Below the pieces are notes generated by a model that saw nothing but the letters and a program-made list of their open reading frames with translations, was not told the DNA's origin and made no database searches. From Phallusia mammillata (lineage: Eukaryota): a stretch of DNA of 64,000 nucleotides. Where the stretch lies: NCBI GenBank assembly GCA_965637545.1, contig OZ281494.1, positions 6,882,001 to 6,946,000 on the forward strand, in the 5' to 3' direction. The translations under genes were made by a program, and so were the position numbers. Positions 1 through 33,387 of the stretch are shown one piece after another; position 1 is the stretch's first letter, and every line of letters begins with the position of its first letter.

Positions 1-135
1 ACATAATTCTTTGCTCACAAAGCTTTGACTTTGAGAAACCTGGGCAGAATTTTCATATTTTGCACATATACAATTGGCACGTGAGAACTAGTTTCAAAAC
101 TGAAAGGTTTGAAGGCTACAGCAAAACAAAAAATC

Positions 136-435
136 ATGGCAACACTGATAATGACTTTTTTGTTGTTGCTACTACAGTTTTTCCTTTGCTAATGCACAAA
201 CGGATGATTTGCTGACCCAATAGCAAACTAGATGCGGAGTTCCCGTGCAGTGGAAATGAATGTTGCACAAGTCACGTATGCTCAGTAGAAGACCTTGGCC
301 CAGGAGACGTTTCAGTAATAATGCAGTTTATAAATGCAGGTTAGCTGGACTTTGATTTAAAAACACAGAATGTTTGTTAAAATATTGATTGTTTGTTAGT
401 AAATGTACTGTAAACTTCCAGAATTGTATACATAA
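136..435 (+). pseudogene. Pseudogene fragment of gene A (signal-peptide exon fused to the CC exon)
   Basis: 1-435 aligns with 6650-6895 and 8168-8390. The ATG at 136 hits TAA after 18 codons because of a frameshift, and the gene-A frame (NAQTDDLLTQ) has TAG at 221-223. The exon-1 equivalent ends at 236 and is joined through one extra G to the exon-5 equivalent (238-339, EFPCSGNECC...VSVIMQFINA). The next intron and a degenerate exon 6 (from 400) are retained. Confidence 0.85.
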
Positions 436-5039: not shown

Positions 5040-6801
5040 GTGAACTTTATAAACATCGTTCATTGTCAAACGACTTTTTGTGGAATTGTGGCTGAACAAA
5101 ACAGATGCATATATCCGTTCGGTAGCAGTAGAGATTTAAAAAAGTGTTTTCTGGTGTTAAATGTTCTTCCTTCCCACGCACTGCCGCTAAATCGATCTAT
5201 CAATATTTATTTTATATAGGCATTTCATCGCAGTAAGCATAACATTTCGGGTTTAAGTTTAAGTTTGACACAGTGCGTACTGGCGGAAATACAACTGCAA
5301 ACTTAGCTGTCGCAAATCTTATACACCATAGGCGAAAAATTACAATTGAGGCATAGTTTTTTTTTACTGTGGATCAATAGGACAAGATTAATGAACACTA
5401 ACCGGCGTGGTCAAAATTTAAATGTTAAATATGTGCGTATGTACATAGTTACATCGTTTATGTTCAAACGTTGTCAAATGCTTGTGGTAACGCGTATAAC
5501 CGAAAAAATGTCAAACATACAAAACACAACAGACGAGGGGGCTTTTGACGGTTTAACTTGCGGTTGCCCATTTACCAATAATGGCGTTAGCTGATTCTGC
5601 TAACACGCGTTAAGAGCGTTTCGATTTCTTACTTCTCTTTACTACACCACTTATGCCCTGCTCCGCCTACGCCAAAATGCCTTTATTTTGCGTCGGGCCT
5701 GATAAGTTGTATGGCGCATCTGAGTAGAAACGAATCAAATGTATCACAAGGGACTAGTCAGCGATATGCGTTTAAAGTACATAGTTACCACTTACACGCA
5801 AGGTGCCATTAATGGCGAGTGTCGTTTACATTTTTCCAACAATATAACAATCGTCACTACCTCAAACACTGCGAGGTTAATCTACCTTAATCGAGGAAAA
5901 TCGTAACAAAAAACAAATAACAAGCATCATACGTTACTTGGCATGCGTCCAGTGTTTAAATAACATCGGAAAGTGTAAAACGCCTTTTTATCACTTTTTG
6001 ATACCCTATTCAACTGCAGATTTGTTGAAGGTAATTAAAACGGTAACCAAGACGAAGCAAGTAGGGTGAGAATTCAAACACCGTTAACGTTGCAACCTAG
6101 GTTTGGAGTTTCAAAATATGTTACACCAATGAAAAGTTACATGGAAACTCCCACATTCTCGAAGCACAAAATGCCGAAAAGCCACTGTTACACACTTCAC
6201 TAGAGGCAGAAAGGTCAAAGCTAATTCTGGAAAAATGATTGGATCAAGCAACATACATCGTCAATTATGTTCACCTAAATTTGCCAGAAATCATTTAAAT
6301 GCGCATTTTATGTAGTATTGTCTGACGATGCAGGCATCTAAAAATCTACAAACTATGTTCGAAAATACAGCACAAGCAGACGCCGCAGACCGCCAGCTTA
6401 GAATGCAGGGGTTTTACAATCGGTTCTATGGGGTATTGGGTGACGGTGGTACATAGTTAGGTTGATATTTTGACTACAGCAGTAAACTAAAAAAGTTCTC
6501 TGGCTTATGTAAGCTGTCGTTGGAATCTCTAGCAATCAGTAGCAGGAATAGCATGTATCTCTACTGGGCCTGGTTCAGATTATATTGTGTCATATTTAGC
6601 AACTGTAAAAAGTGATGAAAGTTACGGCTCTAGGTCGTTTGGTGCCTTCACTTAATTCTTTAGTCACAAAACTTTAACTTTGAGAAACCTGCGTCGACTT
6701 TTCGTACTTGTCGTACAGATATTGGATTGGCGCGTAAAAATTAGTTCCAAACCGGAAGGTTTCAAGGCTGCAGCAGCTCAACAAAACAGGCAACACAAAC
6801 A

Positions 6802-9329
6802 ATGATGTTTGTAAAGTTTGTACCACTCTTTTTCCTTAGTGCTCTGACAAATGCACAAACAGATGACTTGCTGGCCCAACTGCAAACTAGATGCGGTAAG
6901 TTTTTCAGAAAACCTCATGGGACATTAGTTGGTTTTGAATGTATAATAATGCTCAATGATCCGCAAACAAACTGATAAAAAGTTTATGTATACTATTACG
7001 TCTTGGTACTTTTTAGAAAGTTCAAGCTGTGAAAATACGTTAGTTGGTGGAAAAGGGTAATTGACTGTAAAACGCTTTAATTGTAATTTGCCTTTTTTAT
7101 TAGAGGATGCCTTTAATCCTTCCAACGGAGATCTATCTTGTCCAACATTGCTCTGCGAAAAGGCTTCATCCGTGACATGCAGTAAGCATACGATTTTAAC
7201 ACTTTCCAAGGTTTTGTTAAATAAAACCTTTCGGGTATTTTCACCTTGGCTCTGTGGTTAAATAATGAAACAACCGTGTATATACATCTAATAATACAAG
7301 CGTCAAAGTAAATGAAAGTGGAAAAAAATCACTAAATAAATCTATTTCTTTTCTGCAGCTTTTGGGCCAGCAATCTTAAGTGAACCTTTTTACTTCGCAA
7401 AAGGATTATGTAAGTGTCCAAACTGTGTGTGTTTTTGAATGTATCAACTGAAAATAACTATAACCAACTGTGCGATTACCACCACAATAAGCAATATTTA
7501 AGCAACTTATGTAGGGTTAAACAAATATACCACAAATAAAAAGCATTAAATCATAGCAAAAACATGTAACCTTTTTGCACAGAGGTAACCAACTATTTGT
7601 CCCATAAACATTAATTGTATATGAAGAAATCATGGCTTTAGTTGTACGTTAAAATTTTCGCTAAAATGACACTTAAACGGCAAACATAAAAGTAGAATAT
7701 GCAACAGACTTTGGTTAATTTTTAATTTGTTTTTCAGGGGATAATAACAGTATTGTGCGCAGCAACATTACAGGTAAATAATATTTAAAGTAAGCAATCA
7801 GTTAAATAATGTTGTAACTTATATCTAACTAGAGCAGGTGTAAAAAACGGTTTTGATTTCTTGCTGTTGTCGACAGTGCGTCGTTCGTTTCAGTTTGCAA
7901 GTTACAGAAGAAACGAGAGTTGTGTATTATCCTGTCTACTTGTGCATATAAATTTGATTTTTTAATTTTTATACCGCCAATTTCAACATTGATGTGCGGA
8001 TTTGTATCCGCGGGCTCAGGTTTTGAAACCGAATTGCAATACATTACTACAAGTTTTTGAAATATATTTTAAGGATTAAAAACTATTCAAACAAACAGCT
8101 CATCGAATTTTGCACAAAAAGTTTTGCCAAGTGCAATGAAATTCTGTGTTCCATCTTTACCTTGTAGAGTTTTCGTGCGGTGGAAATGAATGTTGCCTAC
8201 GTCACATTAACCCAGCAGAAGGCCTTGGGCCAGGAGACGTTTCAGTAATAATGCAGTTTATAAATGCAGGTTAGTTAAACTTTGATGCAAAAATACAAAA
8301 AGATTGCTAAAACTTTGTTTCTTTTTTTATATTTTAGTAAATGTCCCGTCAACTGACATAACTGTCAACTTTGTGAACGTCGATTACTGTAAGTACGCTT
8401 AACTAAAACCTTATCATGTTTTGTGCTTTTAAAACGTATTTTACAGAATGCTTTTGCGGTACTATTTTAAAATGAAAAAAGTTTTTTTTTATCAATGAAA
8501 TACCACACATTTTTTGCACGAACGACCGTTTGGCATTTTTTAAACTTATGTGAAATTATCAAACCATTAATTTACAGGCGTTGGTAGATACGATCCAATC
8601 AATGTGGACCCGAATAAATGCCTTAATTTAACAGCTTTGTGCAGTAAGTTTCCATTTGTGATTTTACATGAAAGTTTGGTTGTGTTTTATATCTATGCCA
8701 TAAAATCATTTTATTTTAAATGTAGAGAATTACATGTCTGAAGCTATGAACCTAACCAATCAAAATGTAGCTAATGTAGAAGGCGTAGAAGTACCACACC
8801 GAAACGTACAAGTTAACATTACACATTATTGCATACAGCCCCTTTGGTGATAACAAATGCGACAACAAGTAAAGCAACAACAATACAAGATACAATAGAA
8901 GCAACTACACCAACAGAAGTTGCAACACAACAAGCAACAACATCGGCAGATTCTACAACATTACAGGAGACATCTACAGATGTCACAACAGCACACGCGA
9001 CAACTGATGATGCACCAAAGACTTCTGCACATGCTACAACTACACTGACGACAAATGCTGATGCACAGGAGACATCTACAGATGCTACAACAGCCTATAC
9101 GACAACTGCTGATGCACAGAAGACATCTGCAGATGCTACAACAGCACAGAAAACAACTACAGATGCTACAACTGCACGGAAGACATCACAAGATGCTACA
9201 ACTCAAGCTACAACTGTGAAAGCAACAACCTCACAAAACAAGACAATAAAAGAAACAGAAAAAGAAGGCAACATCGGAAACTTGGTAAATAAGTTAATTT
9301 TGTTAACTATTGCTTTCTTTCTTGCCTGA
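6802..9329 (+). CDS. Gene A: Cys-rich cap plus mucin stalk, no GAIN or 7TM, probable GPI anchor, 322 aa
   Basis: Exons 6802-6895, 7104-7181, 7359-7409, 7738-7773, 8168-8269, 8338-8388, 8578-8643 and 8839-9329, all phase 1, total 969 nt with an open frame. Signal peptide MMFVKFVPLFFLSALTNA, a 10-Cys cap paralogous to genes B-E, a Thr-rich stalk, and C-terminus EGNIGNLVNKLILLTIAFFLA*. An alternative ending is possible: a donor at 9285 spliced to 9780 gives STPWKRK*. Confidence 0.78.
8964..9210 (+). repeat. Coding tandem repeats in the gene A stalk (3 x 51 bp, then 3 x 30 bp)
   Basis: QETSTDVTTAHATTDDA / PKTSAHATTTLTTNADA / QETSTDATTAYTTTADA, followed by QKTSADATTA / QKTTTDATTA / RKTSQDATTQ. 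Confidence 0.8.
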
Positions 9330-11100
9330 TAATAGCTTGCGAAAAGCTATGTAAATAGTACAGTGTGTATTACGATGCGCTTGTATTTACGCTTTAAAAA
9401 TTAACTGTCACCTTTAGTAAAAGTCGGAAACATATGCAAAAACAAGTTCTTTATTACAACGTATATGAAAAATATGTAAAAAAAAGCTGTCTATATGGTA
9501 TAAACAAAAGTTTGACTTTGTTTGAAATAGTCATGTTGCCTAACCTGTGAGCAGTACCAAAAACTAAGGCGTCCATGTGACATTTTTTATGAGCGGTTTC
9601 TGCTAGACGGCAGCACAGACCAAAACAAGGCGCTGTTTTATCACACGGGTTTTTACTTATTGCTGTACTCATTTGACGTAAAAAGTTTTATATTTAATTT
9701 TACTTTGTATGCAGGGTTTTGCCTAATAATATTTAACAAACTGTTAGGCTTTAAATTTCTGTATTCTGCATTTTTGTAGTCTACTCCTTGGAAACGAAAA
9801 TAAAAATGGCATATTTCATTTGACGAAAACTAATAAGGTGAAAACCGAAGTTTTTCAAACAGTCTTGTTCACATTATTTACGCCGAAACAAACGATCAAT
9901 GTTTTACAAAACATACAAATGACTCACTATGGTTTCCAACCAATTGTTTGAAACATTTTCTATCGTACGAAGACACTCATTACAAAGAGGCTTTATGTCA
10001 TGAGTGTCACTTGTTACGGGCATCGTGACCTAGCGGAAATAATGACCTAGTACGTAGAAGAATCATTAAACCGGAACACTGATGACAAATACAAGAGTAA
10101 ATGTAAGGGGTAATTTTGCGACGTACACCGTAAACAAAAGCGTTACCACGAGAAGCTTCTACGAAGAGGTCGGCAACCTTCATAACAGTTTCAATCATGC
10201 CGGATTATCCCTTTAGACTTTAGTGCAAAACATCAAATGTTGTTATCATCACTTGCTACTGAATACGATGGTCGTAAACAACAACACCTCACTGAAATGA
10301 ATTGATGCGGATAATTCAGTTTCGGTTGGAAAACCGATATGGTGTAAGTGTAACAAAGAGCACTTTTAAGGGCACAACGAAATTAACTATTTAACTTGGA
10401 CATAATTTAAAAGTTTTGATTAGGTGTAGTCACAAATTCGCCAAAACTGGCTTGGCACATAAACCAAATAAGCGAAATCCAACAATCAATCAAGCGAAAA
10501 GCAATGTTTTGTGGGGCAAAAGCAATAACTTTTTACGATTTCGCAGTCACAAACTATGTAAAAGGTGTTCGGTGTTAATTTTATTTCAGTAAATAACGAT
10601 AATCTCAACGTAAAAGAGCCCGATAGCTGAAGACAAGGAAAAACTGGTGTACATGAAGACACAGACCCTAATATAAACTTTTCTATTTTTGCAACATTTT
10701 GCTGCAAAGTTCCACATCCTATCAAGTTACGTCTATGCAAAGTCACATGAAAAAAACCCACGTTCTAAAACCGTCTGGCGAAATTATGGAAGCTCCCAGA
10801 TACACGCTTCACTGAACGTGGGTCGCTCTACCTGCTAAGTTTAGCTTCAGGAATTTTTAAAGTTGTTGATTCAAACACAAACCGATTGACGGCAAACTAA
10901 TAAGTGCTTTGCAGAGTCAAAAATTTACATATGCAACACAACGGTTTTCATGCCATTCCCCCAAAAATATTACAAGGCTCAAAAAGGTAACTTTGGAGAG
11001 TCATAGTTTTTTTTTTAAATCAAAAGAGGAAAAATTAGTTTTGTCGAAACCCTGTAAGGTTGCAATAACAATTATTCAGTCAAAAAACCTCTTTTGTTAA

Positions 11101-11260
11101 CTGAACGTTTCTGAAATACCAATTGTATGAGGTTATCACAAAAGCAATAATAATGCACTATTATTGTGTCAAAAAAAATTTTTTAAGATGAACATTCTGA
11201 AATACCAAATGTTTGAGGGTATATGAAGAACGATAATAATAATAATGGATTGTCACAAGC
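11101..11260. repeat. Two imperfect ~87-bp-period tandem copies
   Basis: TGAACGTTTCTGAAATACCAATTGTATGAGG...AATAATAATG (from 11102) and TGAACATTCTGAAATACCAAATGTTTGAGGG...AATAATAATG (from 11189). Confidence 0.55.
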
Positions 11261-14200
11261 CAATATGTTTTGGTTTGATCGCAGTTATAGCATAATGACT
11301 GTTGAAATTATTTGCACGCAGAAGTTTACTGATTGATTAGATAACAATTTTAAATTTATCTAATCAAATTGATTTAAATTTATCAGCACAACGCTAATCA
11401 GTATTCACTGAAATGACACGTAGGGCAAAAATATGCAAAATCAGGCAAGAGTCCGCAAATGACTTAACCATTACGTTAACCCAAATAATGTCTATGTCCA
11501 CTCACTTCTCAGGCAAATATGTTGACGTCGCTAGTAGCCACAACAACGGGAAATTACCCAACCATGGCAACCGCCACACGGATGAATGCGCATCTCCAGG
11601 CAGGAAAAATTTAAAACTCAATCAAGCAGAAATCGATTCATAGGCAACTCGTTTCGTGATGTGAGTCTGCATGCCACGTCCTAAACAACAGTTAATGCAA
11701 TAATGAGTTCGTTGGAACAATGTACACAAAACAACAAGCTTGTTATCGCTGTTGTTGTGTGCTTTCGATGTTTCTGCCGCGTTTGGACGTCAAAACGTCG
11801 GTTATTTACAGTAAAAAAACGACTCGAAAAGCAATAGGCCTAATTGTGAATGCGCTTACATTGTACAAAAACCTCTCGTTTTTCATAACTAAAGTCTCTC
11901 ATTTTAAGTTGTCATGACAAAACACATAAGTGTTTTACTACGAACGTATGCGATTGTAAAATATTCCAGTTTTCCTTTTGGTTTTTTAACTTTTTATTAT
12001 TGTCAAAGTATTCCATTGTGGTCAACCCAAACGTACATTGGCATGCCCCCAAAAATCCTTAGTTGTAGCCATTCTACACAACCGAATACTACATCGGATG
12101 TATCGAAATTTCCTGTAGCGGGTTTGACATGGAACAGACTGTTTACGGGTGCGTGTTCACATTTGCATTCAGCACTACACACTCGGGTAAACGACATAAG
12201 AGTATGGGAAATTTCCTTCGATTTCCAACAAAGACCTTAAGTTCTATTTCGGGTCTCGAGCAATAGAAAGTCGACCAAGCGAAGTGGGGTTGGGATCCAG
12301 AAATTTTAAATGAACTGACATCAACTGCAGTGTTTTTTTTTTCACTAAATAAACTTGAACTTCCGCTGGGAATAAAAACGAGATATATTTAGCATTAAGA
12401 CCAAATACAAGCAAGAACATGTTGTAATGTCACCATGAACGTAAAATGTATAGATTACTGTTTCTGATACTTATGCAATAATAAATGAAAGCCTTAATTT
12501 TATAAAATACAAAAGCCGTAAAAGGCAAAAGCGGCGATAAAAGAAGCAAATCATTCGAAACACCGCAAATCCCAACAAAGTTTGTTTACAAAACTAACTG
12601 ACGTTTTTGTAAAATCACATTACGTGAGTGAGCTAATTCCAGTTGTCTATAAATTTCCTAAAGCCTTAGGGGTTTTGTGCCTAAAGTAATGTGCTATGAA
12701 GAACTGAAACCACTTTGTGTGGCAAACAAGGAGTAACGAGTCTAATTTAAGTTCAACGACGAAACCCAGTTCAAGTTCCTATAGTCCAATCCATTGATGT
12801 AGACCACTTGAATGTGTTTAGGTTCGAATCACATAAACGTTAAAATAACACTTGTGTTGCGATACGTTGTGTCCTTGCTGCATTGTATCTGGCGTGAATT
12901 GTTTAGCTAAACTACAAATGACATAGCCGATACGATATGCCAAATGTTTTCTTCAATTCAATGTAAGGATGTGAATGTACACTATTAGGCCTCCAATAAG
13001 TCTTAACTTCTTATGAGCTTTGTATAATTAGTTTTAAGTAATACGAGTTCAGACGTCAATCAATTTCCGATATAAATAGGACTTCTATAAATATTCAGTA
13101 ATTGAAAGTTGGAACTAGAACCACTTGCACAAATAATTTCCAAATTTTGATGATGACTCAATCGACATAATTCAACAAAGAAAGCCAATTTAAAGCCCTA
13201 CTATTGTAGACGTACTCAGTTATTTTCTGGTTTACGAAAACTATTATGTCATTTTAGTTTCGATGACCATAATATGCGTCAATGACCACAATCGCCTCGA
13301 ACGAATTTAACTGCTGTACAAAACGCAGGAAGTTTTAAAAACACAAAAGAGGTAGTAAGGCACGTTAGACACTAAGCTGCCTAGAAGCACAGAATTTTAA
13401 AAGATTTAGCAAACGTAAAACGCAAATACTATGGAAAAGTGATTTTAGTCTATGTTTGGAAAAAAACCTCGCCTACGGTCACAACCCAGCCGTTAGTTTT
13501 CGAAGTAATGTTGAGAAAAAGGCTGAGAGCAAAACCACCACAGGTACGCGTAGAAGTTGGGAGAAAACCACTTGCGTTAAGTTGCGCTTGGGATAGGTTG
13601 CGTATGACAAGTGCGTTTCAGTCTAGGTTAAGTGATTAAACTCCAGATTAACAGAATTTTAATATAGTGAATTTAGTTCAGGCTATGCACCTAAATCTTA
13701 ATGCATACGGGTGTGTAATGCACGAAACATTCAAAACATGTATAAATTTGATTAGAATTAACTATAGTTAGATGATGCCTAGTTCCATATACAGGGTGTT
13801 TCAACAAGCAAATTTGAATAACTTGCGTAGAATGTTGGCAATAAGCAGAATGACGTGCGCCAGTTGAAAAATCGTGACTTAAGTCAAAAACTGGGTTTGC
13901 TTTTTGTTGTGATTTTCGGCCAAATAGTCAGTGCGCAGTTTACTACATACAAGTCAACAGTGGCTGCAGCAAGTTGACTGCAGAGGCATATAGTAATACT
14001 ATGGATAAATTTAAGTTTTAAACCTTCATACCGGAAGTTGAAACCGTGACGTATGTTCAATGAAGATCTACTGCTATGTGTTGACCTTTTAGTGTGACAC
14101 AAATACAAGTTGCCTTGGCAGAGTAGATACAGAAGTTTGTACAGTTACAAACCTATATCTTCCTTTATTTTAAAGCAATGTAAGACTAAAGTGCCAACAA

Positions 14201-14675
14201 AAAATCCTTCTATGTGCGCAAAAATTGCATGGTAATGTTACGGTATAGGTGTAGCTATTAGCAGGCCGAGACGTTACGTCAAACACAACGGATATTGGAA
14301 GCTTCGAATTACACAGTGCAGTACTTGTCTGAATTGCAGTGAGTGAATTACAAATGCAGTACCGTATAGGCTATATAAGACAGTGTGCAGAATGAAAAGC
14401 AACCAAGTTTTATTAAGATTTTAACCACAATTTACAAAACAGCACGTTGCAAATTGTAGGGTTTTGTGCTTGACACTGTTTTGACAAATGAATGGCTTGA
14501 CTTGGTTCTTTGTAATGTAATTAATCAACACCTTGTAAAAATCACTCATGTTCGCAATCAGGAGACCTAGTCGGTTCTATCAGTACAAAGTTACATCGCA
14601 CAAACCTGCGTCATGCTTTTGCTCATTAATTTCTTAGCAATCGTTTATGCGCTTCTGGTTTAAGAGCGGGTATGT

Positions 14676-14718
14676 GACCAAAGCAGGTTTTTTTTTTTTT
14701 TTTTTGACCAAAGCAGGT
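14676..14718 (-). mobile_element. Orphan poly(A) retro-insertion with a 12-13-bp TSD
   Basis: GACCAAAGCAGG, then T18 (14688-14705), then GACCAAAGCAGGT. Confidence 0.7.
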
Positions 14719-15207
14719 GATAAATAAAACTAAACCTTACATGACTCTGAAGACCACGTGCTTGAATGTCGCACAGCAATCCTTTGCAAAAACAGGTGCC
14801 AAAAATAAACTGGTGGCGTGTCGCGCTGCGCATTGGGTTCTGCTGGGTGGGGAAAACTGTGACTCGGTTGGTATTTTAACTATTATTGTGCTCAGCGTGA
14901 AAAGGCCGACAGACAAAAGTTTGCTGCTTGTTCACAGGTAAACAGTCAGTAGTCAGAATTGCACGCACTGTGAGCAGACCCGCACAGATTCTGCGAATTG
15001 CGTTCTGAAGGATTAACTTTGCCATTTCGGACATAGTTTTCCAAAAATTAATTGAAGTTGAATTATTGTTTTTATTAGATAGACATATTTCGTTTTACTT
15101 TTTTGACTTAAATTTATTGTGGTTCTTACACTCAATTCAAACCAGCGGACATCGTTAAACCAAACTAGTTACTGACGCCAACCCTCATTGTGCATAACTG
15201 TCTACAC

Positions 15208-15423
15208 CAGGGGTTCTTAACCTGGGGTGCACGCACCCCCAAGGGGTGCGAGAACTGTTCCTAGGGGGTGCGGGGATGCTGAATCATTAAGGTTGGTTTG
15301 GTCTATTCTATTTAAGCAATTACAGAAGGGGGAGCGAAAATTGGTTAGTGATTTGTAAGGGGTGCGAAAATTGGTTGGTCATTTGAAAGGGGTGCAGCAA
15401 GGAAAAAAGGTTAAGAACCACTG
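15208..15423. mobile_element. hAT MITE, 216 bp
   Basis: TIRs CAGGGGTTCTTAACC / GGTTAAGAACCACTG; perfect TSD GTCTACAC. Confidence 0.88.
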
Positions 15424-17068
15424 GTCTACACGCTCAGGTTTTACTTGTGTTCGATATGCATTCTATAATATATGAACATAACGTTGTCTAAAGGAGTTTG
15501 AATGAATATAAAATGTTTGTGGTTGTAAAAGTTGTGGGCGTAAGTGAGGAAACTTGCGTTTTTAAAGGAAAGTAGGCGGAAACCTGTCGTTAAGTAAGTT
15601 ATCTAAGTTCAAATCGGAGTAATGCTGTTGATTTAGATTGACATCACAACAAACATACATTCTTGCCTCTAAAACCGTTTCGTAAAGACACTATTACAAA
15701 ACATTGTAGCTGAAAAGAATGTAGGCATTGTGTACGCTTTTAAGTGGTTTTTAATCAAAGTACTTTGCAAATATAGGTGCCAAGAGATCCTAAGGAAACA
15801 AATGGTTTCGAGAAATTTAAGATCACAAATTTTACTGGTTCCTTTATTGTTAATGATGCTGTTCAACAGCGGACTGCGAATAGTGTAGGTTAAATAGAAG
15901 TGAGTTTATGCATGCACTTACTCTATTGAAGGGACATATAAGAGCCGTTGCACATAAAGACGTCACTGCAGGCAACCCACGCATTTTTTTCCACCTACAC
16001 GACTTTCCATCCTCCATGTTTTACACACTATATCTCTGCAACAGTTGGCGCTTTGTACTGTACGTTACCTAATGGTATGTTGCATTTTTCACTTAATATT
16101 GCTCATTGCGTACGATGTGTTTAAGGAAGCATAAGTAGGTTTATGAAAAGTTACAATATCGTTTCTGCGCACAGAGTGTAGTATTTTATGCCCACAAACA
16201 AGCTTACCTGTGTATTTAGTTGTAATTGTCAGGGTATACTGGTGTGAACGGTGATACGATAGAAAATGATTCGCCGTGACAAATAAAGTTAGATTAAAAA
16301 GGCATGATACTTAATGTGATTTAAAAACTAGATATTTATAAACATTCTAAACATTCCTGCTAAATGTCATGTCAATTGCCAGTACACACAATGTACGTGG
16401 GTATTAAAAGCAGAATGAGGAGATGTTTAAGATTGTCGAAAATCTGAAAGGTTATTTTGATTTTCAATGTTAGTAACTCATATATGCGGACATATAATAA
16501 ATACAATAGCTCACTTATTTGGTTACTATAATAATTTAAAAACATCGGGTATAGGATGGACTGTTTGTGAGCGATAACTGTGCAAACGAAAATTTTTGTC
16601 ACAATCCATCATAACGAATGAAAGTAAATGATTGCAAACAAACGTGATGTACCGCCATGCAAACTGTGCCGGGCAACAGAACATAGATGTGTTGTTAGCT
16701 TCAAGTGATTTGTAGTTTTAAATTAAATATGTGACGTACATGAGAAAAGACAGGGACTTTCGCTGGAAAATGGGTGTTATTTCGCGGTCAAAAATTCATA
16801 GTGTTTTTTAACTTACATATAACTAGAGATGTTTACTAGGTTACTGTAGGTCAAAACTTTGTGGGTAAGTACAGCTCTACTGGTTGCATTTGATGCAGTT
16901 CTAATAAAGCATGGGGCATTAAATGTCTATAAAATAACATTTTGGTATTTGATTTTGAAGGTCATTTCAAAGTGTAATATGTAGGCTTAAACGTAAATGT
17001 AGAAACTATAACTTTGAACCATTTATGCCACGTGTGAAAAGAAAGAAGTTTAAGGAAAACTAATCACG

Positions 17069-20000
17069 ATGCTTTCAAAAATATTATCACTGCTTTTATT
17101 AATTGCCGCAACGGATGCACAATCGGATGAATTACTTCTTTGGCAGCGATTAAGATGCAGTAAGAAACATCTAAATACAAGTTAAATGTCATAAACATAA
17201 TATATCTTTGTAGTTTATTAACAGCATTTCATGAGTGAATAACAAGCTTGTAAAAACAAGTTTTTTTGCAAAATGTATACTATTTGCTTATCATTTTAAT
17301 GTACCTGTAACGTTTTTCAACCATTAGGTGTTTTGTGTATTTATTTAGTAAATTTTCCTTTTCTGTGCGTAAAACAAAGTTAAAACTAGAATAGTGGTTT
17401 TCCTATATATTGCCGGGTTATATATACTACATCATATTTAATGATGTATCACATATTCCATTTACTATATTCATAATGGATATATATTTGGCACCTACAT
17501 TTGATTGGGTCCCTATCTTTTTCCTGGCACTTTATAACATAATTGTTTCTGCAAGCATAATCTAATGGGTCCTCACCACTAGCGTATTTAGGGGCGGGGG
17601 GACAAGGTGCCTATATAGACAAAATATATAAAGACAAAAACAATATGTGTCCCCTTCCCATAATGAAGTGAGAAAATTAGACCCAAATGCTGTGAGACTT
17701 GTTCGCCTAACTCAGGGGTCGCCAACCCGCGGCTCCGGAGCCGCATGCGGCTCTTTGATCCCTCTGATACGGCTCAGTTTTTGAATTTACCAAATGTTGT
17801 ACATTTGAATAAAAATTATGTGACGATTATGCCGAACACAAAAGTCGAACACGAAAATTGAAGTGCAGTAGCATGACTGTACTCGCTTGTTGCAGTTACC
17901 TGCAAGCCCATCTCTATACCACCAAACGTGAAGTCTGAAAGAGGCAAACTGGCGGTGCGCAGGTTAATACGCAATATGAGACAATACTGTTTTTGTTTGC
18001 AGTGTGTGTGCGCGCGTAACAATAGCTGTTTGTTAATTGTTACGTAACAAACGCGTTAACAAAGGAATACAAATCTGCAAAAACAGAATATGCAACGCTA
18101 CGTAAAGTTGTTTTCTCTGCTGACGAGACTAGTATACCAGTGTGTCTAATATGCATTGAAACACTAGCTAACAACAAAAAGTCGAATGTCATAAGACTAA
18201 AAACGTTTTGCATTTTATTTTAAATTTTAAAACGACTTTGTGGCTCCCAGTGTTTTTTTCTACGTGAAACTGGTCCGAGTGGCTCTTTGAGTAGTAAAGG
18301 TTGGCGACCCCTGGCCTAACTGATTTGGAATTTGTTTAGGCATATTAAGCAGTCTTACAGCGGATGTGACAAATTGTTCAACATTACTGTGCGAAAAAAA
18401 TTCTTCGGAAGTGACGTGCGGTAAGTACATCGCTAAACCTTATCATGTGTTGGATAATGTTTTGATTTCCTTTGTTGTATGATGAAACTTAAAAACGCAA
18501 AAAAAACATGCATTCACTTGAAACAAATTCATGATTGATGTGAATAATATACGTAACCATTTTTTGTGTTTTTTACAGTTTTTGCGCCTGTAATTCCATT
18601 GGATCGATTTCGTACAAACATCAGTAAGTCAAAAACTTCAACTTATATCATATAACGTGCAAGGGATTAAATTGCAAACATCAGTCATACATTTATGGTT
18701 ACTAAACGATTACAAAAATGTCTTTAAAAAAACGAAGCCAATAAATAACATAAAATTCATTTTGAAACAGAAAAATGTAGAACAGAAGAAATATTTAAAA
18801 CAACTTTTTTAGATGCCTCTCTTCCAACATGTTACCGCGGAAGCGGAAATTGTAAGTACAAAATTTATTTGTTTTAAATTTCAAAATTTTATCGGACAAA
18901 CATCACTTTTGACAAAAACATAAATACTGCAGTATTTATTATTCGTAAAAGTGAATTTCCAGTAGAAAATCCATTATATAATGATTTATAAGAGATGCAA
19001 TTGTTACGTAAATCCAGTTAGTTTTTAATCTACATTTTGTTTTTTACTCATTTTCATTTTCGGGTTATTAATAACAAACTTTTGTTTTGCAAACTTTCAC
19101 TGAAGTTTACAGAGAAAAAACTACGCTCAAAAATCAGAGCAACGAGTTTCTTTCACGCGAGGGTAAAGCGATCATTACTGATAATTTGTGTGTTTTAAAA
19201 ACTAGTAACTTGGACCGATATATTTGTGTCCAAATGTAGGTTTATACCAGTTTTTTTTAACAAAAGTTTGTTTTAAACACCTTTTTTGTCAAAAAAAGAA
19301 GAAAAAACTGCAGTAGAGAGTCGTTTTAGTAATACGTTTTTTTAAATCAACGACTTCTCTAACGTACACGATAGCTTCAATGGAAAAAGTCAAAAAAACA
19401 CTAAATTTCACAAAGCGAGAACTTTGTTTGGGTACCCGCACGTTAAAGCAGCGATTTTTCCGCCCCCTACCTGCAATCGGAAATAAGTCTGGTAATTGCT
19501 TGGTACCTCAACGATTACGCTGAAATTTTAAATAAAGATCAAGAATTATTTTAAAAGTTTACCTATATAACATTTTTTGCATTAATTTTTTATTTTGACC
19601 TGTGAAAACAAAACAAACCTAAAAGGATAAAATTGCTGAATCAAGCCACCAACAGCCAAACTATGAAACCTATGTGTCACACACTATAGTGTATTTTAAA
19701 CCTGAAGTTTAAAGTACTTTCCATTGACCAAACATAACGAAGACTGTACGAAAACAATTGGTGGAAGAGGACCCACAATAATGTTGGGATTAATTGTTAA
19801 TATTGAATTTAAATTTAAACTAAGCTACTGCGGTTTTGAGACGGCCTGTGGCAAACGCGACTGTGTGACGACTTGGGGTATTTAATTCTCCCCCTTGCTT
19901 TGTAGGGGATACCGATACGATTAACGGAGCTAACATTACAGGTACTTTCTTGGTTATATATGTAAATGATGTGTTTAATAAAATAAAATCAAAACGCTTA

Positions 20001-23000
20001 ATTTTTGCAGCGTCTTCGTGCAAGGAACTGGATTGTTGCTTAACGCATATAAACTCGCCCAGTGATACGGAATATGATCTTTCCGCAGTTTCAGTAAACA
20101 TGATATTCATAAACGGCACAGGTTGGTAAACCTTTCAAAGAACAAACTCTATACACTTGCGCCTGCTCTATGTCATGCGATACTTGGTGCAGGATAATGT
20201 TCTAACTTGCATATATTACAGAAACAGTATCACAGGAATCAAATCTAAGTTGATTTTTTTCAGACCTAACAAAAAATGTTGCATTTAAGCTCAGTTTTTT
20301 ATGGCGAAACCTATACTCACCATTTAAATCAAGTTTTCCTAAAGGACGTTTGCTCTGTTTCAAAGCAAAATACGGAAACAACTTAAACAAACATGTCTCC
20401 CGTGTTTTATAACATGTGGTGTTATTGTGCTTGCATTTCAACAAAAGTTTTAACTTGAAGTTGTAACAAAAACGTTAAAAAAACATTTTTCCACACGAAG
20501 GTAACATACATTATATTAAAGTGTTTTTTAACTTTTTATAGAAATTGATCCAATCTTGGTTGGTCCGATCAATAATGTGAGAATCATCATTGTAAACTTC
20601 GACTATTGTAAGTAAACGCAAGCAAAACAACGTCATTTTGGTTGTGAAAAAGTTATTGTGTAATAGTTTTATTGTCAGACAGATCCAAAACTTTTGGTTG
20701 GCGTTAGCATTAGCATATTACAGTAAAAAAAACAGAATGTAGAACACTAACTAAGACAAGTTTCTTCAACAGGTCTTAGAGTTTCTACCGATTCACTTAA
20801 TGTATACCCAAACGACTGCCTCAATCTAAAAGATCTTTGTGGTAAGTTTCAATGTGTGCAAATATGCATGAAGCTTTTTTTTCCTATTTCTGTTGCACGT
20901 CGACATTTTTTTGACATGGAATCCCAATTAAATGACTTCGTTGCATGAAAGCTACAAGTATAGTATCACTCACTAGAAGACAATAGCTATGTAACTCTAG
21001 CAGTCCGCACTAGCGTAATGCAGCCAAACGTTACTCAACCTTGCACACAGCCTCTTTATCGACTCCAACAACAAGAGCTACAACAAGCCAAGCAACACCA
21101 GTAGCAACAAAAACAGAAGCCATGACACCACAAGCTACAACTGCGCTAACTCCAACAACACAAGCTACAACACAAGAAGCAACAACAATAGTAGCTACAA
21201 CGACAATCGCTGCAACAACAGAAGCCCTGACACCACAAGCTACAACTGTTCGAACTCCAATAAAGCAAGCTACAACAGTGCATATTTCAACCGCAGAAAC
21301 TACAAATGCAGAAACTTCGACTATAGTGGTTACAACATCACTTGCTGCAACAACACAAGTTACAGCGACAACGCAGGAAGCTACAACAACAATGCAGACT
21401 ATGGCACCACAGACCACGACAATGCAGACTACAGAAGTGAAAACTACAACCGAGAAAGCCACAACATCTAAGGCATCAGCATCACAAACTACACAAGACG
21501 AAACAACACAAGAACAAGGTCAAGAAGTAACTAATAGCGACATGGTAGTTGGTAGCGGATTAAACACAACTGTAGAAATGTCTACAACGCCACAGCCTGA
21601 CCCAACAGCAACACAAGCTGGTAACATCTCTGTGACAAACACTGTGACATCATCAGCACTTACGTTACTTATGCAAAACACAAACACTGTCACTGTACGC
21701 CAAATTACGTCTGGTATTACGAGCATGAGCATGGTTAATTTTGTTTCTAATTTAGCTAACACAACTACAAATGAGACACCCACAACCGCAGAAATACCGA
21801 CCAAAACCACTGTGACTGCGGAATCCACGACATCACATATAACAACACAAACGACTACAGCACCCACAGACAAAGAAACAACCACAGACAACGTAATAAT
21901 CTCAACACAAACAGAGAAAACAACTCAAGCGGCTACAATTGAAAAGACAACTACCCTAAACAAGGAAACAACTATGGAAATAACCACGGTACCCACAACT
22001 ACAGAAACAACCACGCTACTTACAACTGCAGATACAACGACTACACCCACAACTGCAGATACAACGACTGCAACCACAAGTGCGGAAACAACAACAGCAT
22101 TAACAATTGCAGAAACGACGACAGCACCTACAACCACAGAAGACTTAATTACAGAAACAATCACGCCAATTACATCTGCAGAAATAACAACTGCACCCAC
22201 AACCACAGAAACAACGACAGCAGACAAAACTACAGCTCTCACAATAGCAGAAACAACCACACCACTCATAACTGCAGAAACAACCACACTATCCAAAACC
22301 ACAGTAACATCCACAACACTCACAACTGCAGAAACAACCACACCATCCAAAACTACAGAAACAACGACCGCACCCACAACTACAGTATCAACCACAGCAC
22401 TCATAACCGCAGAAACAACCACAGCACCCACAACTATAGAAACAACCGAATCACCCACAACGCCAGAAACATCAATTTCATCCACCGCAAAGATCAACAA
22501 CGAAACAGAAAACATCACAATCGCAGTAATTCCCAATAACCCTGAAACAATAACAACCATTGGAATAACACAATCACGCATGATGTTGCCTGTTTCCACA
22601 GCTGCTGTCGCAACATCGACTGTGAGCACAATGAGTGCAGTAGCCGCTACACAATCAACAACTACAGTTTCATCAACAGCTTCTCGTGTGCCCGACAGCG
22701 ATATCTCAGATGTTGTCGAAAACGAGGCGATTGGGTCAATCCGCTCCATGCTTGGTTTGGTTGAATCCAGTGAAGTATTCGTGACCAGAGACGTCAGCAC
22801 GCCGATAGAAGGAAGATTTTCACAAGCTTACTTCTCTGGGGCAACGGTTAATCCCTCCGCCGTCGAAAGCCTGCTTCAAGTCGCAGTTGTTTCATCACAA
22901 TTCGATATCACTGCAGATGTAAGTGAGTTTGCTTCTGCCGAGGAAGCAGATGGACTCAGTACACAAGCTTTACCTTTCTCCGGTTCACCAGCCCTTAGCG

Positions 23001-26000: not shown

Positions 26001-27523
26001 AAACCCTCGCAAAGTGGCGGCCACAAAGTTGGCATTGGGTTGGGGAATTCCTCTGCTGATTGTGGTACTAGCCAGTGCCATTGGTTTCCCCACAAACCGT
26101 TACATGGATTCCGATCAGTACAGCAACAACTACTACAGATGCTGGGTAAGTTTAACAGCCTAAAATCATAAATAGAAAAAAATGTCACCGAGACACAAAA
26201 TTTTGTTTTAAATTTAAAAGGAAAGAAAACTTAACGGCTATTTGATTTGTCGTTATCCTTGAAATTGTCGCAATGGAACGTCAAATTTTTAGATGCAGCA
26301 TTTTAGTATAATGTGTACGATTTTCTGTCTTGCACGTTGACCTGAACAGCAAACAACCAAAAGGGACGACTAAAGCGGGAAACTGCAGCAACAAATAATA
26401 TGTCCGGTCATAACAAACAGTGGTAACCAAATCGTTTTTTCTCTGCAGGTTGGAACTGAGTACAACGCTCTTCTCGCCTCGGTTATCATTCCTATGATAA
26501 TCATCTACGTTGTCAACATCCTAATCGCCTTCAAAGTGATGTGGTTTGTCCACAAACTTCGGAGTAGCGCTAGAGAACTAAAACCGTCCAACGGTGCTCA
26601 CCGCGGATCTAACGTAGGCGCCGCGGTTCGAAGCGACGCCAAAAGCGTTGGCGCCACGCTCAAAGTTTTTCTCCTACTCATCCCGGTACTGGGGGTACCA
26701 CTGCTTTTCGGGTTTTTGACAAGTAAGAATTCGTTTCAATGCTCGTTTGGTATCTGTGCAATGCCTTATGTGCAGAAATCGAAGTAAACTGTTTAATAGT
26801 ATACACATCCATTTAATAAGGTATAGCTACCAGACGTAATGCATAAACGAGCATTACTCTTACAGCAGATTTTATTGTAGATAATCGACGTTTCGATGTC
26901 ATACACAAGTCACATTTATCAGAATAATGACATATCTTCAAAACGGCGTTTAATATTTATGATAAAAACTGATGAAAGAACAATAGTCATTTATGCAAGC
27001 TAGTGGTTTGGATGTATAGATAACCAATATTTCCACATACTTGCAGACTTTTCAAAAACTTGGTAGTAAACGCGTATAGCATTGAATTTTTGCTACAGCA
27101 ATACACATCAGCATCAACGCATATGAACATTTGCAACCATTATTGCAATTGTGTAGGTGTTAACAAGCTTGCAGAGCAAAGTTTGCAATTACCTGCAGTG
27201 ACAATATTGTCTTCCTGAACCGCCACTTAAATATAATTTGCATTGTAGGCATTGAACCATACGAAGCATCTGTGGTGTTCATGTACATCAACGTCATCCT
27301 TAATGGACTGCAAGGTTTATTTCTCCTTCTCGTATACTGCGTGTTTGGAACCGAGGTTCGGGAGGCCTGTTCCCGTTATGTACAAAGAGTCAAGCTGCGA
27401 TACACAAGTGAACCTCCAACCCACAACCCCAGCAAGGGAACGCCAAGCACCCACTCGACTAACACAAGTTCAGGATCGGGAAACAAAACCAACAGTTTGC
27501 CGGAAAATCAACACAGAATCTAG
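17069..27523 (+). CDS. Gene B: adhesion GPCR (cap, ~550-aa mucin stalk, GAIN/GPS, 7TM), 1270 aa
   Basis: Exons 17069-17159, 18340-18420, 18579-18623, 18813-18851, 19906-19941, 20011-20121, 20542-20607, 20773-20841, 21051-23326, 25044-25275, 25928-26145, 26449-26722 and 27249-27523; total 3813 nt with consistent phases. GPS reads CGFF...FSSNGC...CFCNHTTLFAVLL (23168-23290). 7tm_2 motifs include INLSVALL, WMLWEG, LGWGIP, RCW and NGLQG. Confidence 0.9.
17713..18313. mobile_element. hAT MITE, 601 bp, gene B intron 1
   Basis: TIRs CAGGGGTCGCCAACC / GGTTGGCGACCCCTG; perfect TSD GCCTAACT. Confidence 0.88.
21960..22480 (+). repeat. Degenerate coding repeats (TTAETTT/TTAPTTT) in the gene B stalk
   Basis: Recurrent ACTGCAGAAACAACC and GCACCCACAACYACAG units; the translation is built of AETTTA/APTTTE blocks. 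Confidence 0.75.
24940..25031. repeat. Short imperfect tandem repeat just upstream of the first 7TM exon of gene B
   Basis: CTTGACCAAAAGTCGATTTTGATGTA..., CTTAACTAAAAGTCGATTTTGATGTA..., then a third partial unit CTTAACTAAAA ending 12 nt before the acceptor at 25043. Confidence 0.7.
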
Positions 27524-31834: not shown

Positions 31835-33387
31835 GGGAAGGCCTGACACTTTTCATCAAAACCACCGACAAAATACTTTCGCTGAACAAGAAGAATCCTC
31901 GCAAAGTGGCGGCCACAAAGCTGGCATTGGGTTGGGGAATTCCTCTGTTAATCGTGCTTTTAGCCAGTGCCATTGGTTTCCCCACAAACCGTTACATGGA
32001 TTCCGATCCGATCCACAAAAACTACTACAGATGTTGGGTAAGTTCAACAAGCTAAAAATATTTGTCTTCGAGGCACATCTGTTTGCAAATTAAAAAAAAG
32101 AACTTAAACGGTTGTTTAAATTGTCTTTACCCTCATAACAATGTCGCAATGGGGACGTCAAATTTTCCGTTAAGCACAGTTTTAGTTTAATGTGTACGAT
32201 TTATTTTGTCTTGCACGCTGACCTATAAAGTAAACTACCACAAGCCACGGCAAAGGCGAGGAACCGCAGCAGCAAATAATTAAATCCGGCCATAACAAAC
32301 AGTTGTAACCAAATCGTTTTTTCTCTGCAGGTTGGAACTGAATACAACGCTCTTCTCGCCTCTGTTATCATTCCTATGATAATCATCTACGTTGTGAACA
32401 TCCTAATCGCCTTCAAAGTGATGTGGTTTGTCCACAAACTTCGGAGTAGCGCTAGAGAGCTAAAACCGTCCAACGGTGCTCACCGCGGATCTAACGTAGG
32501 CGCCGCGGTTCGAAGCGACGCCGAAAGCGTTGGCGCCACGCTCAAAGTTTTTCTTCTACTCATCCCGGTGCTGGGGGTTCCTCTGCTTTTTAGGTTTTTG
32601 ACAAGTAAGAATTCGTATGAAAGCTCGTTTGATATTTGTGCAATGCAGTATGTCCCAGAAATAGAAGTAAACTGTTTAAGAGTATACACATGCAAGCTAA
32701 TCCAATAAATAAGCTATCGCTGCCAGGCATTTTGTGTAAACGAGCATTACTCTTTCAGTAGTTTTTATGAAAGATAATCGACGTTCCGACGTCATATACA
32801 AGACGCATTTATCGGGATAATGACATATCTTTGAAACATCGAATTATTTATTATAAATACTGCTGGAAGAGCATTACTAGTTTATGCAAGCTAATGGCTT
32901 GACTGTATTCATAACCATATTTCCACATACATGCATTGAATTTGAATTACAGCACGAAATTATGCATAACCTGAAGTTACAACCATTATTGCAATTATTA
33001 ATTTGCTAGCAAGTTTCCAAAGTAAAGTTTGCAATCAACTGCAGAAACATACTTCCCTACAGAGACAATATTGTCTGCCTGAATCGCCACTTAAATATGA
33101 TTTGCATTGCAGGCATTGAACCATACGAAGCATCTGTGGTGTTCATGTACATCAACGTCATTCTTAATGGGCTGCAAGGTTTATTTCTCCTTCTCGTCTA
33201 CTGCGTCTTTGGAACCGAGGTTCGGGAGGCCTGTTCCCGTTATGTACAAAGAGTCAAGCTGCGATACACGAGCGAGCCTTCAACCCACAACCCCAGCAAG
33301 GGAACGCCAAGCACCCATTCGACTAACACAAGTGCAGGATCGGGAAACAAAACCAACAGTTTGCCGGAAAATCAACACAGAATCTAG
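31835..33387 (+). pseudogene. Gene B': duplicated 3' 7TM exons (partial exon 11, intact exons 12 and 13)
   Basis: 31835-32037 (starts at EGLTLF and lacks the native acceptor), 32331-32604 and 33113-33387. The frames are open and the remaining splice sites are intact, but there are no upstream exons of its own. Confidence 0.8.

What the first reader, a model, noticed from the sequence alone, without database searches (positions are those of the whole stretch)
6802..9329. Gene A: cap plus mucin paralogue with a GPI-type tail and no GAIN or 7TM (candidate decoy or co-receptor)
Seen: A has the full cap, closest to B (LLCEK, W..N/DxI...NIT, VSVxMxFIN). A ~150-aa Thr stalk follows, then GNIGNLVNKLILLTIAFFLA*. 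I found no CNHTT or KKVRSDRTVV exons between 9330 and 17000. Established: a short C-terminal hydrophobic segment after small residues is the GPI-signal pattern, and GPI-anchored decoys exist in other receptor families (e.g. TNFR-family DcR1). Inference: A is a non-signalling binder for the same class of ligand.
Basis: partly seen in the sequence, partly recalled or inferred. Interest (0 to 1): 0.75.

Follow-up and report, generated by a model that had tools for sequence, protein, structure and literature searches.

The report
Receptor-less cap-and-stalk paralogue gene
At the head of a sea-squirt cluster of adhesion-type receptor genes sits an intact shortened copy that keeps only the outer "cap" and sugar-coated stalk and may end in a lipid-anchor signal. 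Nothing yet shows that it is expressed or acts as a decoy.

Summary
Gene A (6802-9329, + strand) fits an eight-exon GT-AG model in which every intron is phase 1. It encodes 322 aa: a signal peptide, a 10-cysteine cap, a ~140-aa Thr-rich stalk and the tail ...EGNIGNLVNKLILLTIAFFLA*.

- **Cap:** it is 50% identical to neighbour B's cap, with all 10 Cys aligned. It has changed no faster than B's since the two split, so it looks selected.
- **Missing receptor part:** I found no GAIN, GPS or 7TM coding sequence between A's stop and B's start.
- **Tail:** it meets the minimal rules for a GPI signal (N304-I-G306, a 5-aa spacer, 11 hydrophobic residues). Only 0.3% of random ORF ends in this window are as hydrophobic. 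It is at the short limit, and no GPI predictor was available.

Weak points:
- No RNA was found, and there was no control gene.
- The acceptor that joins the stalk (8839) is the weakest in the array. A stronger acceptor at 8726 would give a cap-only secreted product.
- Splicing of A's phase-1 exons into B cannot be excluded.
- The "decoy or co-receptor" idea is pure inference.

The nearest database proteins are Phallusia mammillata adhesion-GPCR cDNAs that carry the same cap end with GAIN and 7TM. Verdict: a real truncated paralogue, plausibly GPI-anchored or secreted, of moderate interest.

The parts
6802..6895 (+). Exon 1: start codon, signal peptide (MMFVKFVPLFFLSALTNA|QTDD) and the first conserved Cys (C31). 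The donor is gtaagt, phase 1.
   Evidence: B, C and E have equivalent first exons that end in Cys with phase 1. The -3/-1 residues are T and A, read by inspection.
7104..7181 (+). Exon 2: cap, DAFNPSNGDLSCPTLLCEKASSVTC (3 Cys)
7359..7409 (+). Exon 3: cap, FGPAILSEPFYFAKGL
7738..7773 (+). Exon 4: cap, (W)DNNSIVRSNIT with two N-glycosylation sequons
8168..8269 (+). Exon 5: cap, FSCGGNECCLRHINPAEGLGPGDVSVIMQFINA. This is the best-conserved cap exon (3 Cys).
8338..8388 (+). Exon 6: cap, NVPSTDITVNFVNVDY. Its last base starts the split codon for C138.
8578..8643 (+). Exon 7: end of the cap, VGRYDPINVDPNKCLNLTALC, with a strong donor (13.2 bits)
   Evidence: The same ...CLNL..C | stalk junction is seen spliced in P. 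mammillata cDNA proteins P0002 and P0006.
8839..9329 (+). Exon 8: Thr-rich stalk, hydrophobic tail and the TGA stop. The acceptor cattattgcatacag|CC is weak (1.3 bits).
   Evidence: It is the only phase-compatible AG that opens the stalk frame, and B has a homologous ttgcacacag|CC.
8963..9202 (+). In-frame tandem repeats (periods 51, 102 and 30 nt) inside the stalk
9270..9278 (+). Best candidate GPI omega triplet, N304-I305-G306
   Evidence: Rule-based reading only, no predictor run.
9294..9326 (+). C-terminal hydrophobic segment LILLTIAFFLA (11 aa). Both DNA runs carry the variant T316A at 9306.
8726..8850 (+). Competing reading: acceptor at 8726 (7.5 bits), in frame with exon 7, running 41 codons to a stop at 8848-8850. 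This would give a cap-only product of 199 aa.
   Evidence: tblastn found no counterpart in B.
9285..9779 (+).
9799..9804 (+). First AATAAA after the stop, 470 nt downstream

Best explanation
Gene A is a stand-alone, truncated paralogue of the neighbouring ascidian-specific adhesion GPCR genes. It was most likely born by partial tandem duplication of their 5' half.

It keeps a promoter-proximal signal-peptide exon, the six short phase-1 exons of the 10-Cys 'cap', and the start of the large exon that encodes the O-glycosylated Thr-rich stalk. Where B-E continue into GAIN/GPS and the 7TM domain, A's reading frame ends after a short hydrophobic stretch.

The most likely product is a heavily glycosylated surface protein that presents the cap on a mucin stalk. 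It would be attached by a GPI anchor added at about N304. If the short signal is inefficient, it would be released into the medium.

Shown: the exon structure, the homology, the conservation of the cap, the absence of GAIN/7TM, and the form of the tail. Inferred: expression, use of the 8839 acceptor, GPI attachment, and any binding or decoy role.
For: - The eight-exon, all-phase-1 GT-AG model gives one open frame of 322 aa.
- The cap is 50% identical to B's, z = 35, with all 10 Cys aligned.
- Lineage-specific changes against outgroups C, D and E are 7 for A and 7 for B, so A's cap has not evolved faster than that of an intact receptor.
- Against its decayed copy at 1-427, A's exons are 84.6% identical and the non-coding sequence 77.1%. 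The copy, not A, carries the frameshifts and the stop.
- The stalk frame stays open for 170 codons. The other two frames are broken about every 50 codons. The stalk repeats have periods that are multiples of 3.
- The mean Kyte-Doolittle hydropathy of the last 11 residues is 2.97. Only 5 of 1585 random ORF ends in the window reach this. A crude omega/spacer/tail rule is met by 0.3% of them.
- The one tail polymorphism (T316A) keeps the tail hydrophobic. No frame-breaking variant is listed in two DNA runs.
- No GAIN, GPS or 7TM remnant lies in 9330-17068.
- The 9284 donor is no better than background.
- Family members are transcribed and spliced at the same cap/stalk junction in P. mammillata cDNAs.
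Against: - There is no transcript evidence. 12 candidate RNA runs held none of the sampled words, and two of them laid nothing. No control gene could be laid.
- The 8839 acceptor has the lowest score of 22 array acceptors (1.3 bits leave-one-out). An upstream acceptor at 8726 scores 7.5 bits and leads to a stop before the stalk.
- The putative GPI signal has only 18 residues after omega, with a 5-aa spacer and an 11-aa tail. This is the short extreme, and no trained predictor was run.
- The tail is T-rich sequence directly after a GT. It is the kind of peptide that reading into former intron sequence would produce.
- No orthologue could be searched for, so conservation of the truncated architecture across species is unknown.
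- Polymorphism data are too few to show constraint (5 exonic and 7 intronic substitutions).
Confidence: 0.45

Rival explanations
1. A is a non-functional or silent relic of a partial duplication. Its cap still looks intact, but the stalk, stop and hydrophobic tail are accidents of truncation, and the tail is read-through into T-rich former non-coding sequence.
For: The array holds other partial copies: a decayed A-like fragment at 1-427 and a duplicated 3' part of B. No RNA was found. The acceptor into the stalk is weak. Exonic and intronic polymorphism levels are alike.
Against: All seven introns keep GT-AG and phase 1. All 10 Cys and the signal peptide are kept at only 50% identity to B. A shows no rate acceleration relative to B. 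A tail this hydrophobic occurs in 0.3% of random ORF ends.
Confidence: 0.2
2. A encodes a cap-only secreted protein. Exon 7 splices to the stronger acceptor at 8726, translation stops at 8848-8850 (199 aa), and the Thr-rich ORF lies in the 3' UTR.
For: The 8726 acceptor scores 7.5 bits against 1.3 for 8839. It is phase-compatible and opens 41 sense codons. The resulting 82-nt intron is within the local size range.
Against: B-E have no counterpart of the 8726-8850 segment. It adds an eleventh, unpaired Cys. It leaves unexplained the 170-codon open Thr frame, the in-frame repeats and the GPI-like end. B shares the ttgcayacag|CC acceptor motif.
Confidence: 0.15
3. A's cap exons are an alternative 5' cassette of gene B. 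Because every cap intron in A and B is phase 1, exon 7 of A could splice in frame over about 12 kb into B's large exon or cap exons. That would give B a second, different cap.
For: Phase compatibility. A lacks its own GAIN and 7TM. A and B lie on the same strand with no recognisable gene between them.
Against: A has its own stalk exon and stop. B has its own signal-peptide exon, and C-E are each self-contained. The cap introns mapped in A and B are mostly under 0.5 kb and none exceeds about 1.3 kb. No transcript data exist either way.
Confidence: 0.1
4. A is secreted. The donor at 9284 is used and joins 9780, replacing the hydrophobic tail with STPWKRK* just ahead of the AATAAA at 9799.
For: The junction reads through as stated, and the AATAAA overlaps the new stop.
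Against: The donor scores 3.7 bits, equal to the weakest real donor. Decoys of that strength occur 5.2 times per kb in the intergenic DNA. The acceptor is below the median. No paralogue has an intron in its stalk.
Confidence: 0.05

Closest known systems
Neighbouring array genes B-E and Phallusia mammillata 'adhesion G-protein coupled receptor D1-like' cDNA proteins (CAB3220065.1 = P0002, CAB3220061.1 = P0006)
   Same: They share the cap (10 Cys, CLNL..C end), the phase-1 exon pattern and a Ser/Thr-rich stalk directly after the cap.
   Different: They continue into GAIN/GPS (CFCNHTT) and a 7tm_2 domain. A stops after the stalk.
Ascidian-specific 'unclassified' adhesion GPCRs of Ciona (Kamesh et al. 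2008, PMC2396169)
   Same: A lineage-specific, tandemly expanding adhesion-GPCR group whose N-termini show no recognised domain except GPS.
   Different: That survey lists receptors only. It does not describe 7TM-less paralogues.
GPI-anchored truncated paralogues of transmembrane receptors, such as TRAIL-R3/DcR1 (TNFRSF10C) and T-cadherin (CDH13). These are named from general knowledge and were not tested here.
   Same: The ectodomain of a signalling family is kept, the transmembrane and cytoplasmic parts are replaced by a short hydrophobic GPI signal, and the gene lies beside or near full-length relatives.
   Different: They belong to unrelated protein families. Their anchoring and ligand binding are experimentally shown, and A's are not.
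7TM-independent ('N-terminus-only', trans) activity of adhesion GPCR ectodomains, such as C. elegans LAT-1 deltaTM2-7 (PMC3776922) and the review PMC13197933
   Same: A membrane-tethered ectodomain without a working 7TM can be biologically active.
   Different: Those are engineered or shed fragments of full receptors, and LAT-1's activity needed the GPS. A is a separate gene and has no GAIN or GPS.

Membership tests
Adhesion GPCR (class B2) | 7TM domain of the secretin/adhesion type (Pfam 7tm_2) | tested here: not met
   No tblastn hit to the 7TM exons of B-E in 6802-17068 at E < 1. Pfam finds 7tm_2 in D but nothing in A's last exon.
Adhesion GPCR (class B2) | GAIN domain with GPS motif next to the membrane | tested here: not met
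   GPS is found in B and C. A and its downstream spacer have no GAIN/GPS similarity or C.C.H[LT][TS] motif.
Cap module of this ascidian receptor array | Signal-peptide exon ending in Cys, then short phase-1 exons with 10 conserved Cys and the motifs C.T.LC, C.G..CC and CLNL..C | tested here: met
Cap module of this ascidian receptor array | Assignment of the cap to a described domain family or fold | tested here: inconclusive
Pfam finds nothing for exon 5 or for the cap end of P0002. A profile of exon 5 searched against 1.84 billion representatives gave only three spurious repeat proteins.
Mucin-like stalk | Long Ser/Thr-rich, tandemly repetitive segment | tested here: met
   42% Ser+Thr over 140 aa, with 51/102-nt repeats. 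Glycosylation itself was not testable.
GPI-anchored proteins | N-terminal signal peptide | tested here: met
   A hydrophobic core and a T-N-A|Q cleavage pattern, conserved in B. Read by inspection, no predictor run.
GPI-anchored proteins | C-terminal signal: small omega and omega+2 residues, a polar spacer, and a hydrophobic stretch running to the C-terminus | tested here: inconclusive
   N304/G306, spacer NLVNK (5 aa) and LILLTIAFFLA (11 aa) satisfy a minimal rule that 0.3% of random ORF ends meet. Both lengths are at the lower limit, and NetGPI, PredGPI and big-PI were not available.
GPI-anchored proteins | Release by PI-PLC or chemical detection of the anchor | not testable with these tools
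   Bench experiment
Decoy or co-receptor | Expressed, and binds the ligand of (or associates with) the signalling paralogues | not testable with these tools
   No RNA was found. No ligand is known for any member.

The most novel reading that the evidence does not exclude
A is an expressed, GPI-anchored 'N-terminus-only' gene derived from an adhesion GPCR. It would tune the neighbouring receptors, either by competing for the cap's ligand or by pairing with their caps. That would make it a natural, genetically separate version of the 7TM-independent ectodomain function so far seen only with engineered or shed fragments.
Probability: 0.12. Interest if true: 0.55.

Novelty: new variant of a known kind. 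Interest (0 to 1): 0.3.

Why it matters
Adhesion GPCR ectodomains are known to act without their 7TM part, but this comes from engineered truncations and shed fragments. A conserved, separately encoded, membrane-anchored cap-and-stalk gene next to its full-length relatives would be a natural experiment on that idea. It would also give a handle on the unknown ligand of a large ascidian-specific receptor group.

If A is instead just a leftover of duplication, it only illustrates the birth-and-death turnover already evident in these arrays.

Tried and rejected
- **Extra exons rejected.** An exon at 7017-7056 breaks the frame and has a 1.2-bit donor. An exon at 8726 followed by a GC-AG intron 8783-8838 would reach the stalk but needs a non-canonical donor.
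- **Word searches.** A's last exon found nothing among proteins of 89-283 aa, a range that cannot contain the 322-aa model. B's GAIN region found nothing among proteins of 421-1340 aa. The D 7TM query gave only two P. mammillata fragments.
- **Large profile search.** The search with the exon-5 alignment returned three repeat proteins with many weak stretches. I judged these spurious.
- **Other look-ups.** The exact look-up of P0002 on contigs found nothing. Cluster look-up added one longer cDNA protein, P0006, also 5'-truncated. Pfam on exon pieces found nothing for the cap.
- **RNA.** Two candidate RNA runs laid no contig.
- **Loose contig end.** A 30-nt loose end at 8942 was searched in the window with no match.
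- **Earlier notes of the scan.** Searches by sequence and by words gave no A-like truncated genes.
- **Left out under the operators' rule.** The joined 322-aa model has no reference, so it was not sent to Pfam, the structure tools, homology searches or any GPI predictor. It was only translated, counted and aligned inside local scripts from window coordinates.

Full report
**Setting**

The window is AT-rich (about 36% G+C) and full of short GT-AG introns. It carries a same-strand tandem array of adhesion GPCR genes. Pfam finds GPS in the large exons of B and C, and 7tm_2 in D. GAIN/GPS exons ending in CFCNHTT lie at about 23.3, 43.4, 53.5 and 63.7 kb, followed by 7TM exons.

The only database relatives found are cDNA-derived Phallusia mammillata proteins named 'adhesion GPCR D1-like / GPR133'. 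They are 61-78% identical to D and E. The genome is therefore an ascidian of, or near, Phallusia. Ascidian-specific adhesion GPCRs with no recognised N-terminal domain are known from Ciona (PMC2396169).

**Gene model**

Three-frame reading and a frame-and-phase search give eight exons: 6802-6895, 7104-7181, 7359-7409, 7738-7773, 8168-8269, 8338-8388, 8578-8643 and 8839-9329. Every intron is GT-AG and phase 1. The total is 969 nt, or 322 aa.

Two further ORF pieces look like exons but are not in the model. 7017-7056 breaks the frame. 8726-8850 joins exon 7 in frame but reaches a stop at 8848-8850 instead of the stalk, and B has no counterpart of it.

The protein has these parts:
- a signal peptide (cleavage pattern TNA|Q)
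- a cap of about 140 aa with 10 Cys and three N-glycosylation sequons
- a 140-aa stalk (36% Thr, 42% Ser+Thr) built partly of in-frame 51/102-nt repeats
- the tail KEGNIGNLVNKLILLTIAFFLA

**Homology of the cap**

Homology-guided exon finding recovers the same exons, with the same phases, in B, C, D and E. A's cap is 50% identical to B's over 127 aligned residues, z = 35 against shuffles, with all 10 Cys aligned. The P. mammillata cDNA proteins show the cap end (CLNLSHYC) spliced directly to a short Ser/Thr stalk, then GAIN and 7TM. The family and this junction type are therefore transcribed.

**Is the cap under selection?**

At sites where A and B differ and an outgroup (C, D or E) decides, A has 7 private changes and B has 7. 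A's cap has not sped up relative to that of an intact receptor.

A decayed copy of A's 5' end lies at 1-427. In it, exon 1 carries frameshifts and a stop and is fused directly to exon 5. Against this copy, A's exons are 84.6% identical and the non-coding sequence 77.1%. Both results argue that A's cap has been kept by selection. Neither says when the 3' half was lost.

**Absence of GAIN and 7TM**

tblastn with all GAIN, 7TM and C-tail exons of B-E finds nothing below E = 1 between 9330 and 17068 or upstream of A. A six-frame motif scan is also empty. The spacer holds no long ORF and no repeat shared with the array.

**The tail**

The last 11 residues have a mean hydropathy of 2.97. Only 5 of 1585 stop-terminated open frames in the window, on both strands, reach this value. 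A crude rule is met equally rarely, at 0.3%. That rule requires small omega and omega+2 residues, a 4-10 residue spacer, and an uncharged hydrophobic end.

The best omega site is N304, with G306 at omega+2. The spacer is 5 residues and the hydrophobic stretch is 11. Eleven residues are too short for a membrane span. By the textbook description of GPI signals, which is my own knowledge, both lengths sit at the lower edge. The variant at 9306 in both DNA runs changes T316 to Ala and keeps the tail hydrophobic. No trained predictor was available.

**Alternative ends**

A position-weight matrix was built from 25 donors and 22 acceptors of the array.
- The 9284 donor scores 3.7 bits, equal to the weakest real donor (median 10.2). 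Decoys of that strength occur 5.2 times per kb in the spacer. The 9780 acceptor is below the median.
- The 9284 donor is phase 0, so it could not join B's phase-1 exons in frame.
- The acceptor that opens the stalk (8839) scores only 1.3 bits when left out of the training set, the lowest of all. An acceptor at 8726 scores 7.5 bits, is in phase, and leads to a stop at 8848-8850, which would give a cap-only product.
- In favour of 8839: it is the only AG that can open the stalk frame, and B has a near-identical ttgcacacag|CC at the same place. B also has a second possible acceptor 27 nt upstream, and C uses a strong, different one.
- Also in favour of 8839: the Thr frame stays open for 170 codons while the other two frames break about every 50.

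**Expression and variation**

The run search found two DNA holders and 12 small runs guessed to be RNA. Those 12 hold none of the sampled words. Laying two of them on 6600-12599 gave nothing. They are not confirmed to be RNA, and no control gene could be laid. Public Phallusia RNA appears from the papers I found to be largely embryonic. This absence therefore carries little weight.

The DNA contigs show five exonic substitutions: I128T, T129I, T316A and two synonymous. They show seven intronic substitutions, and the listed indels fall only in non-coding parts. This is too little to measure constraint.

**Interpretation**

The best reading is a stand-alone truncated paralogue that displays the cap on a mucin stalk, either GPI-anchored or secreted. 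Four readings remain open:
- a silent relic
- a cap-only secreted product through the 8726 acceptor
- an alternative 5' cassette for B, since all introns are phase 1
- a spliced secreted end through 9284->9780

The decoy or co-receptor function is analogy only. 7TM-independent ectodomain activity is documented for engineered LAT-1, where it needed the GPS that A lacks (PMC3776922). In the 300,000 characters held of the 2026 consortium review, the words 'decoy' and 'GPI' do not occur (PMC13197933).

It was not sent to Pfam, the homology searches, structure prediction or any GPI predictor. Searches were made exon by exon by reference. The joined model was only translated, counted and aligned in local scripts from window coordinates.

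Noticed in passing
window 1-427: A decayed partial copy of gene A. Upstream sequence plus exon 1 (75% identical, with frameshifting indels and a TAG stop) is fused directly to exon 5, intron 5 and the start of exon 6 (78% identical). The copy runs off the window's start.
   Followed up: partly
window 9316-9624: Right after A's stop, both DNA runs carry a second haplotype at about half depth. It has 17 substitutions and a 13-bp deletion in 309 nt, about ten times the diversity seen inside the gene.
   Followed up: no
window 8942: In both DNA runs, a contig follows the stalk exon up to 8942 and then continues into more than 250 nt of sequence not present in the window. Depth over 8800-9199 is also raised. 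This could be a structural variant of exon 8 or a second copy elsewhere in the genome.
   Followed up: partly
window 23.3, 43.4, 53.5 and 63.7 kb; P0002, P0006: All array members and the P. mammillata cDNAs have the GPS site as CFCNHT|T rather than the usual H-L|T/S. Whether these receptors self-cleave is open.
   Followed up: no
window 6896-8838, 17160-21050 and the paralogues: Every cap intron in A, and in B-E where mapped, is phase 1. Cap exons are therefore freely exchangeable in frame between genes.
   Followed up: partly
window 26437-27496 and 32283-33360: The 3' part of a receptor (TM5-7 and the start of the C-tail) is present twice downstream of B. This is another partial duplication in the array and is already the subject of another note on this window.
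   Followed up: no
window 11068-11240: An 87-nt tandem duplication (75% identical) in the A-B spacer.
   Followed up: no
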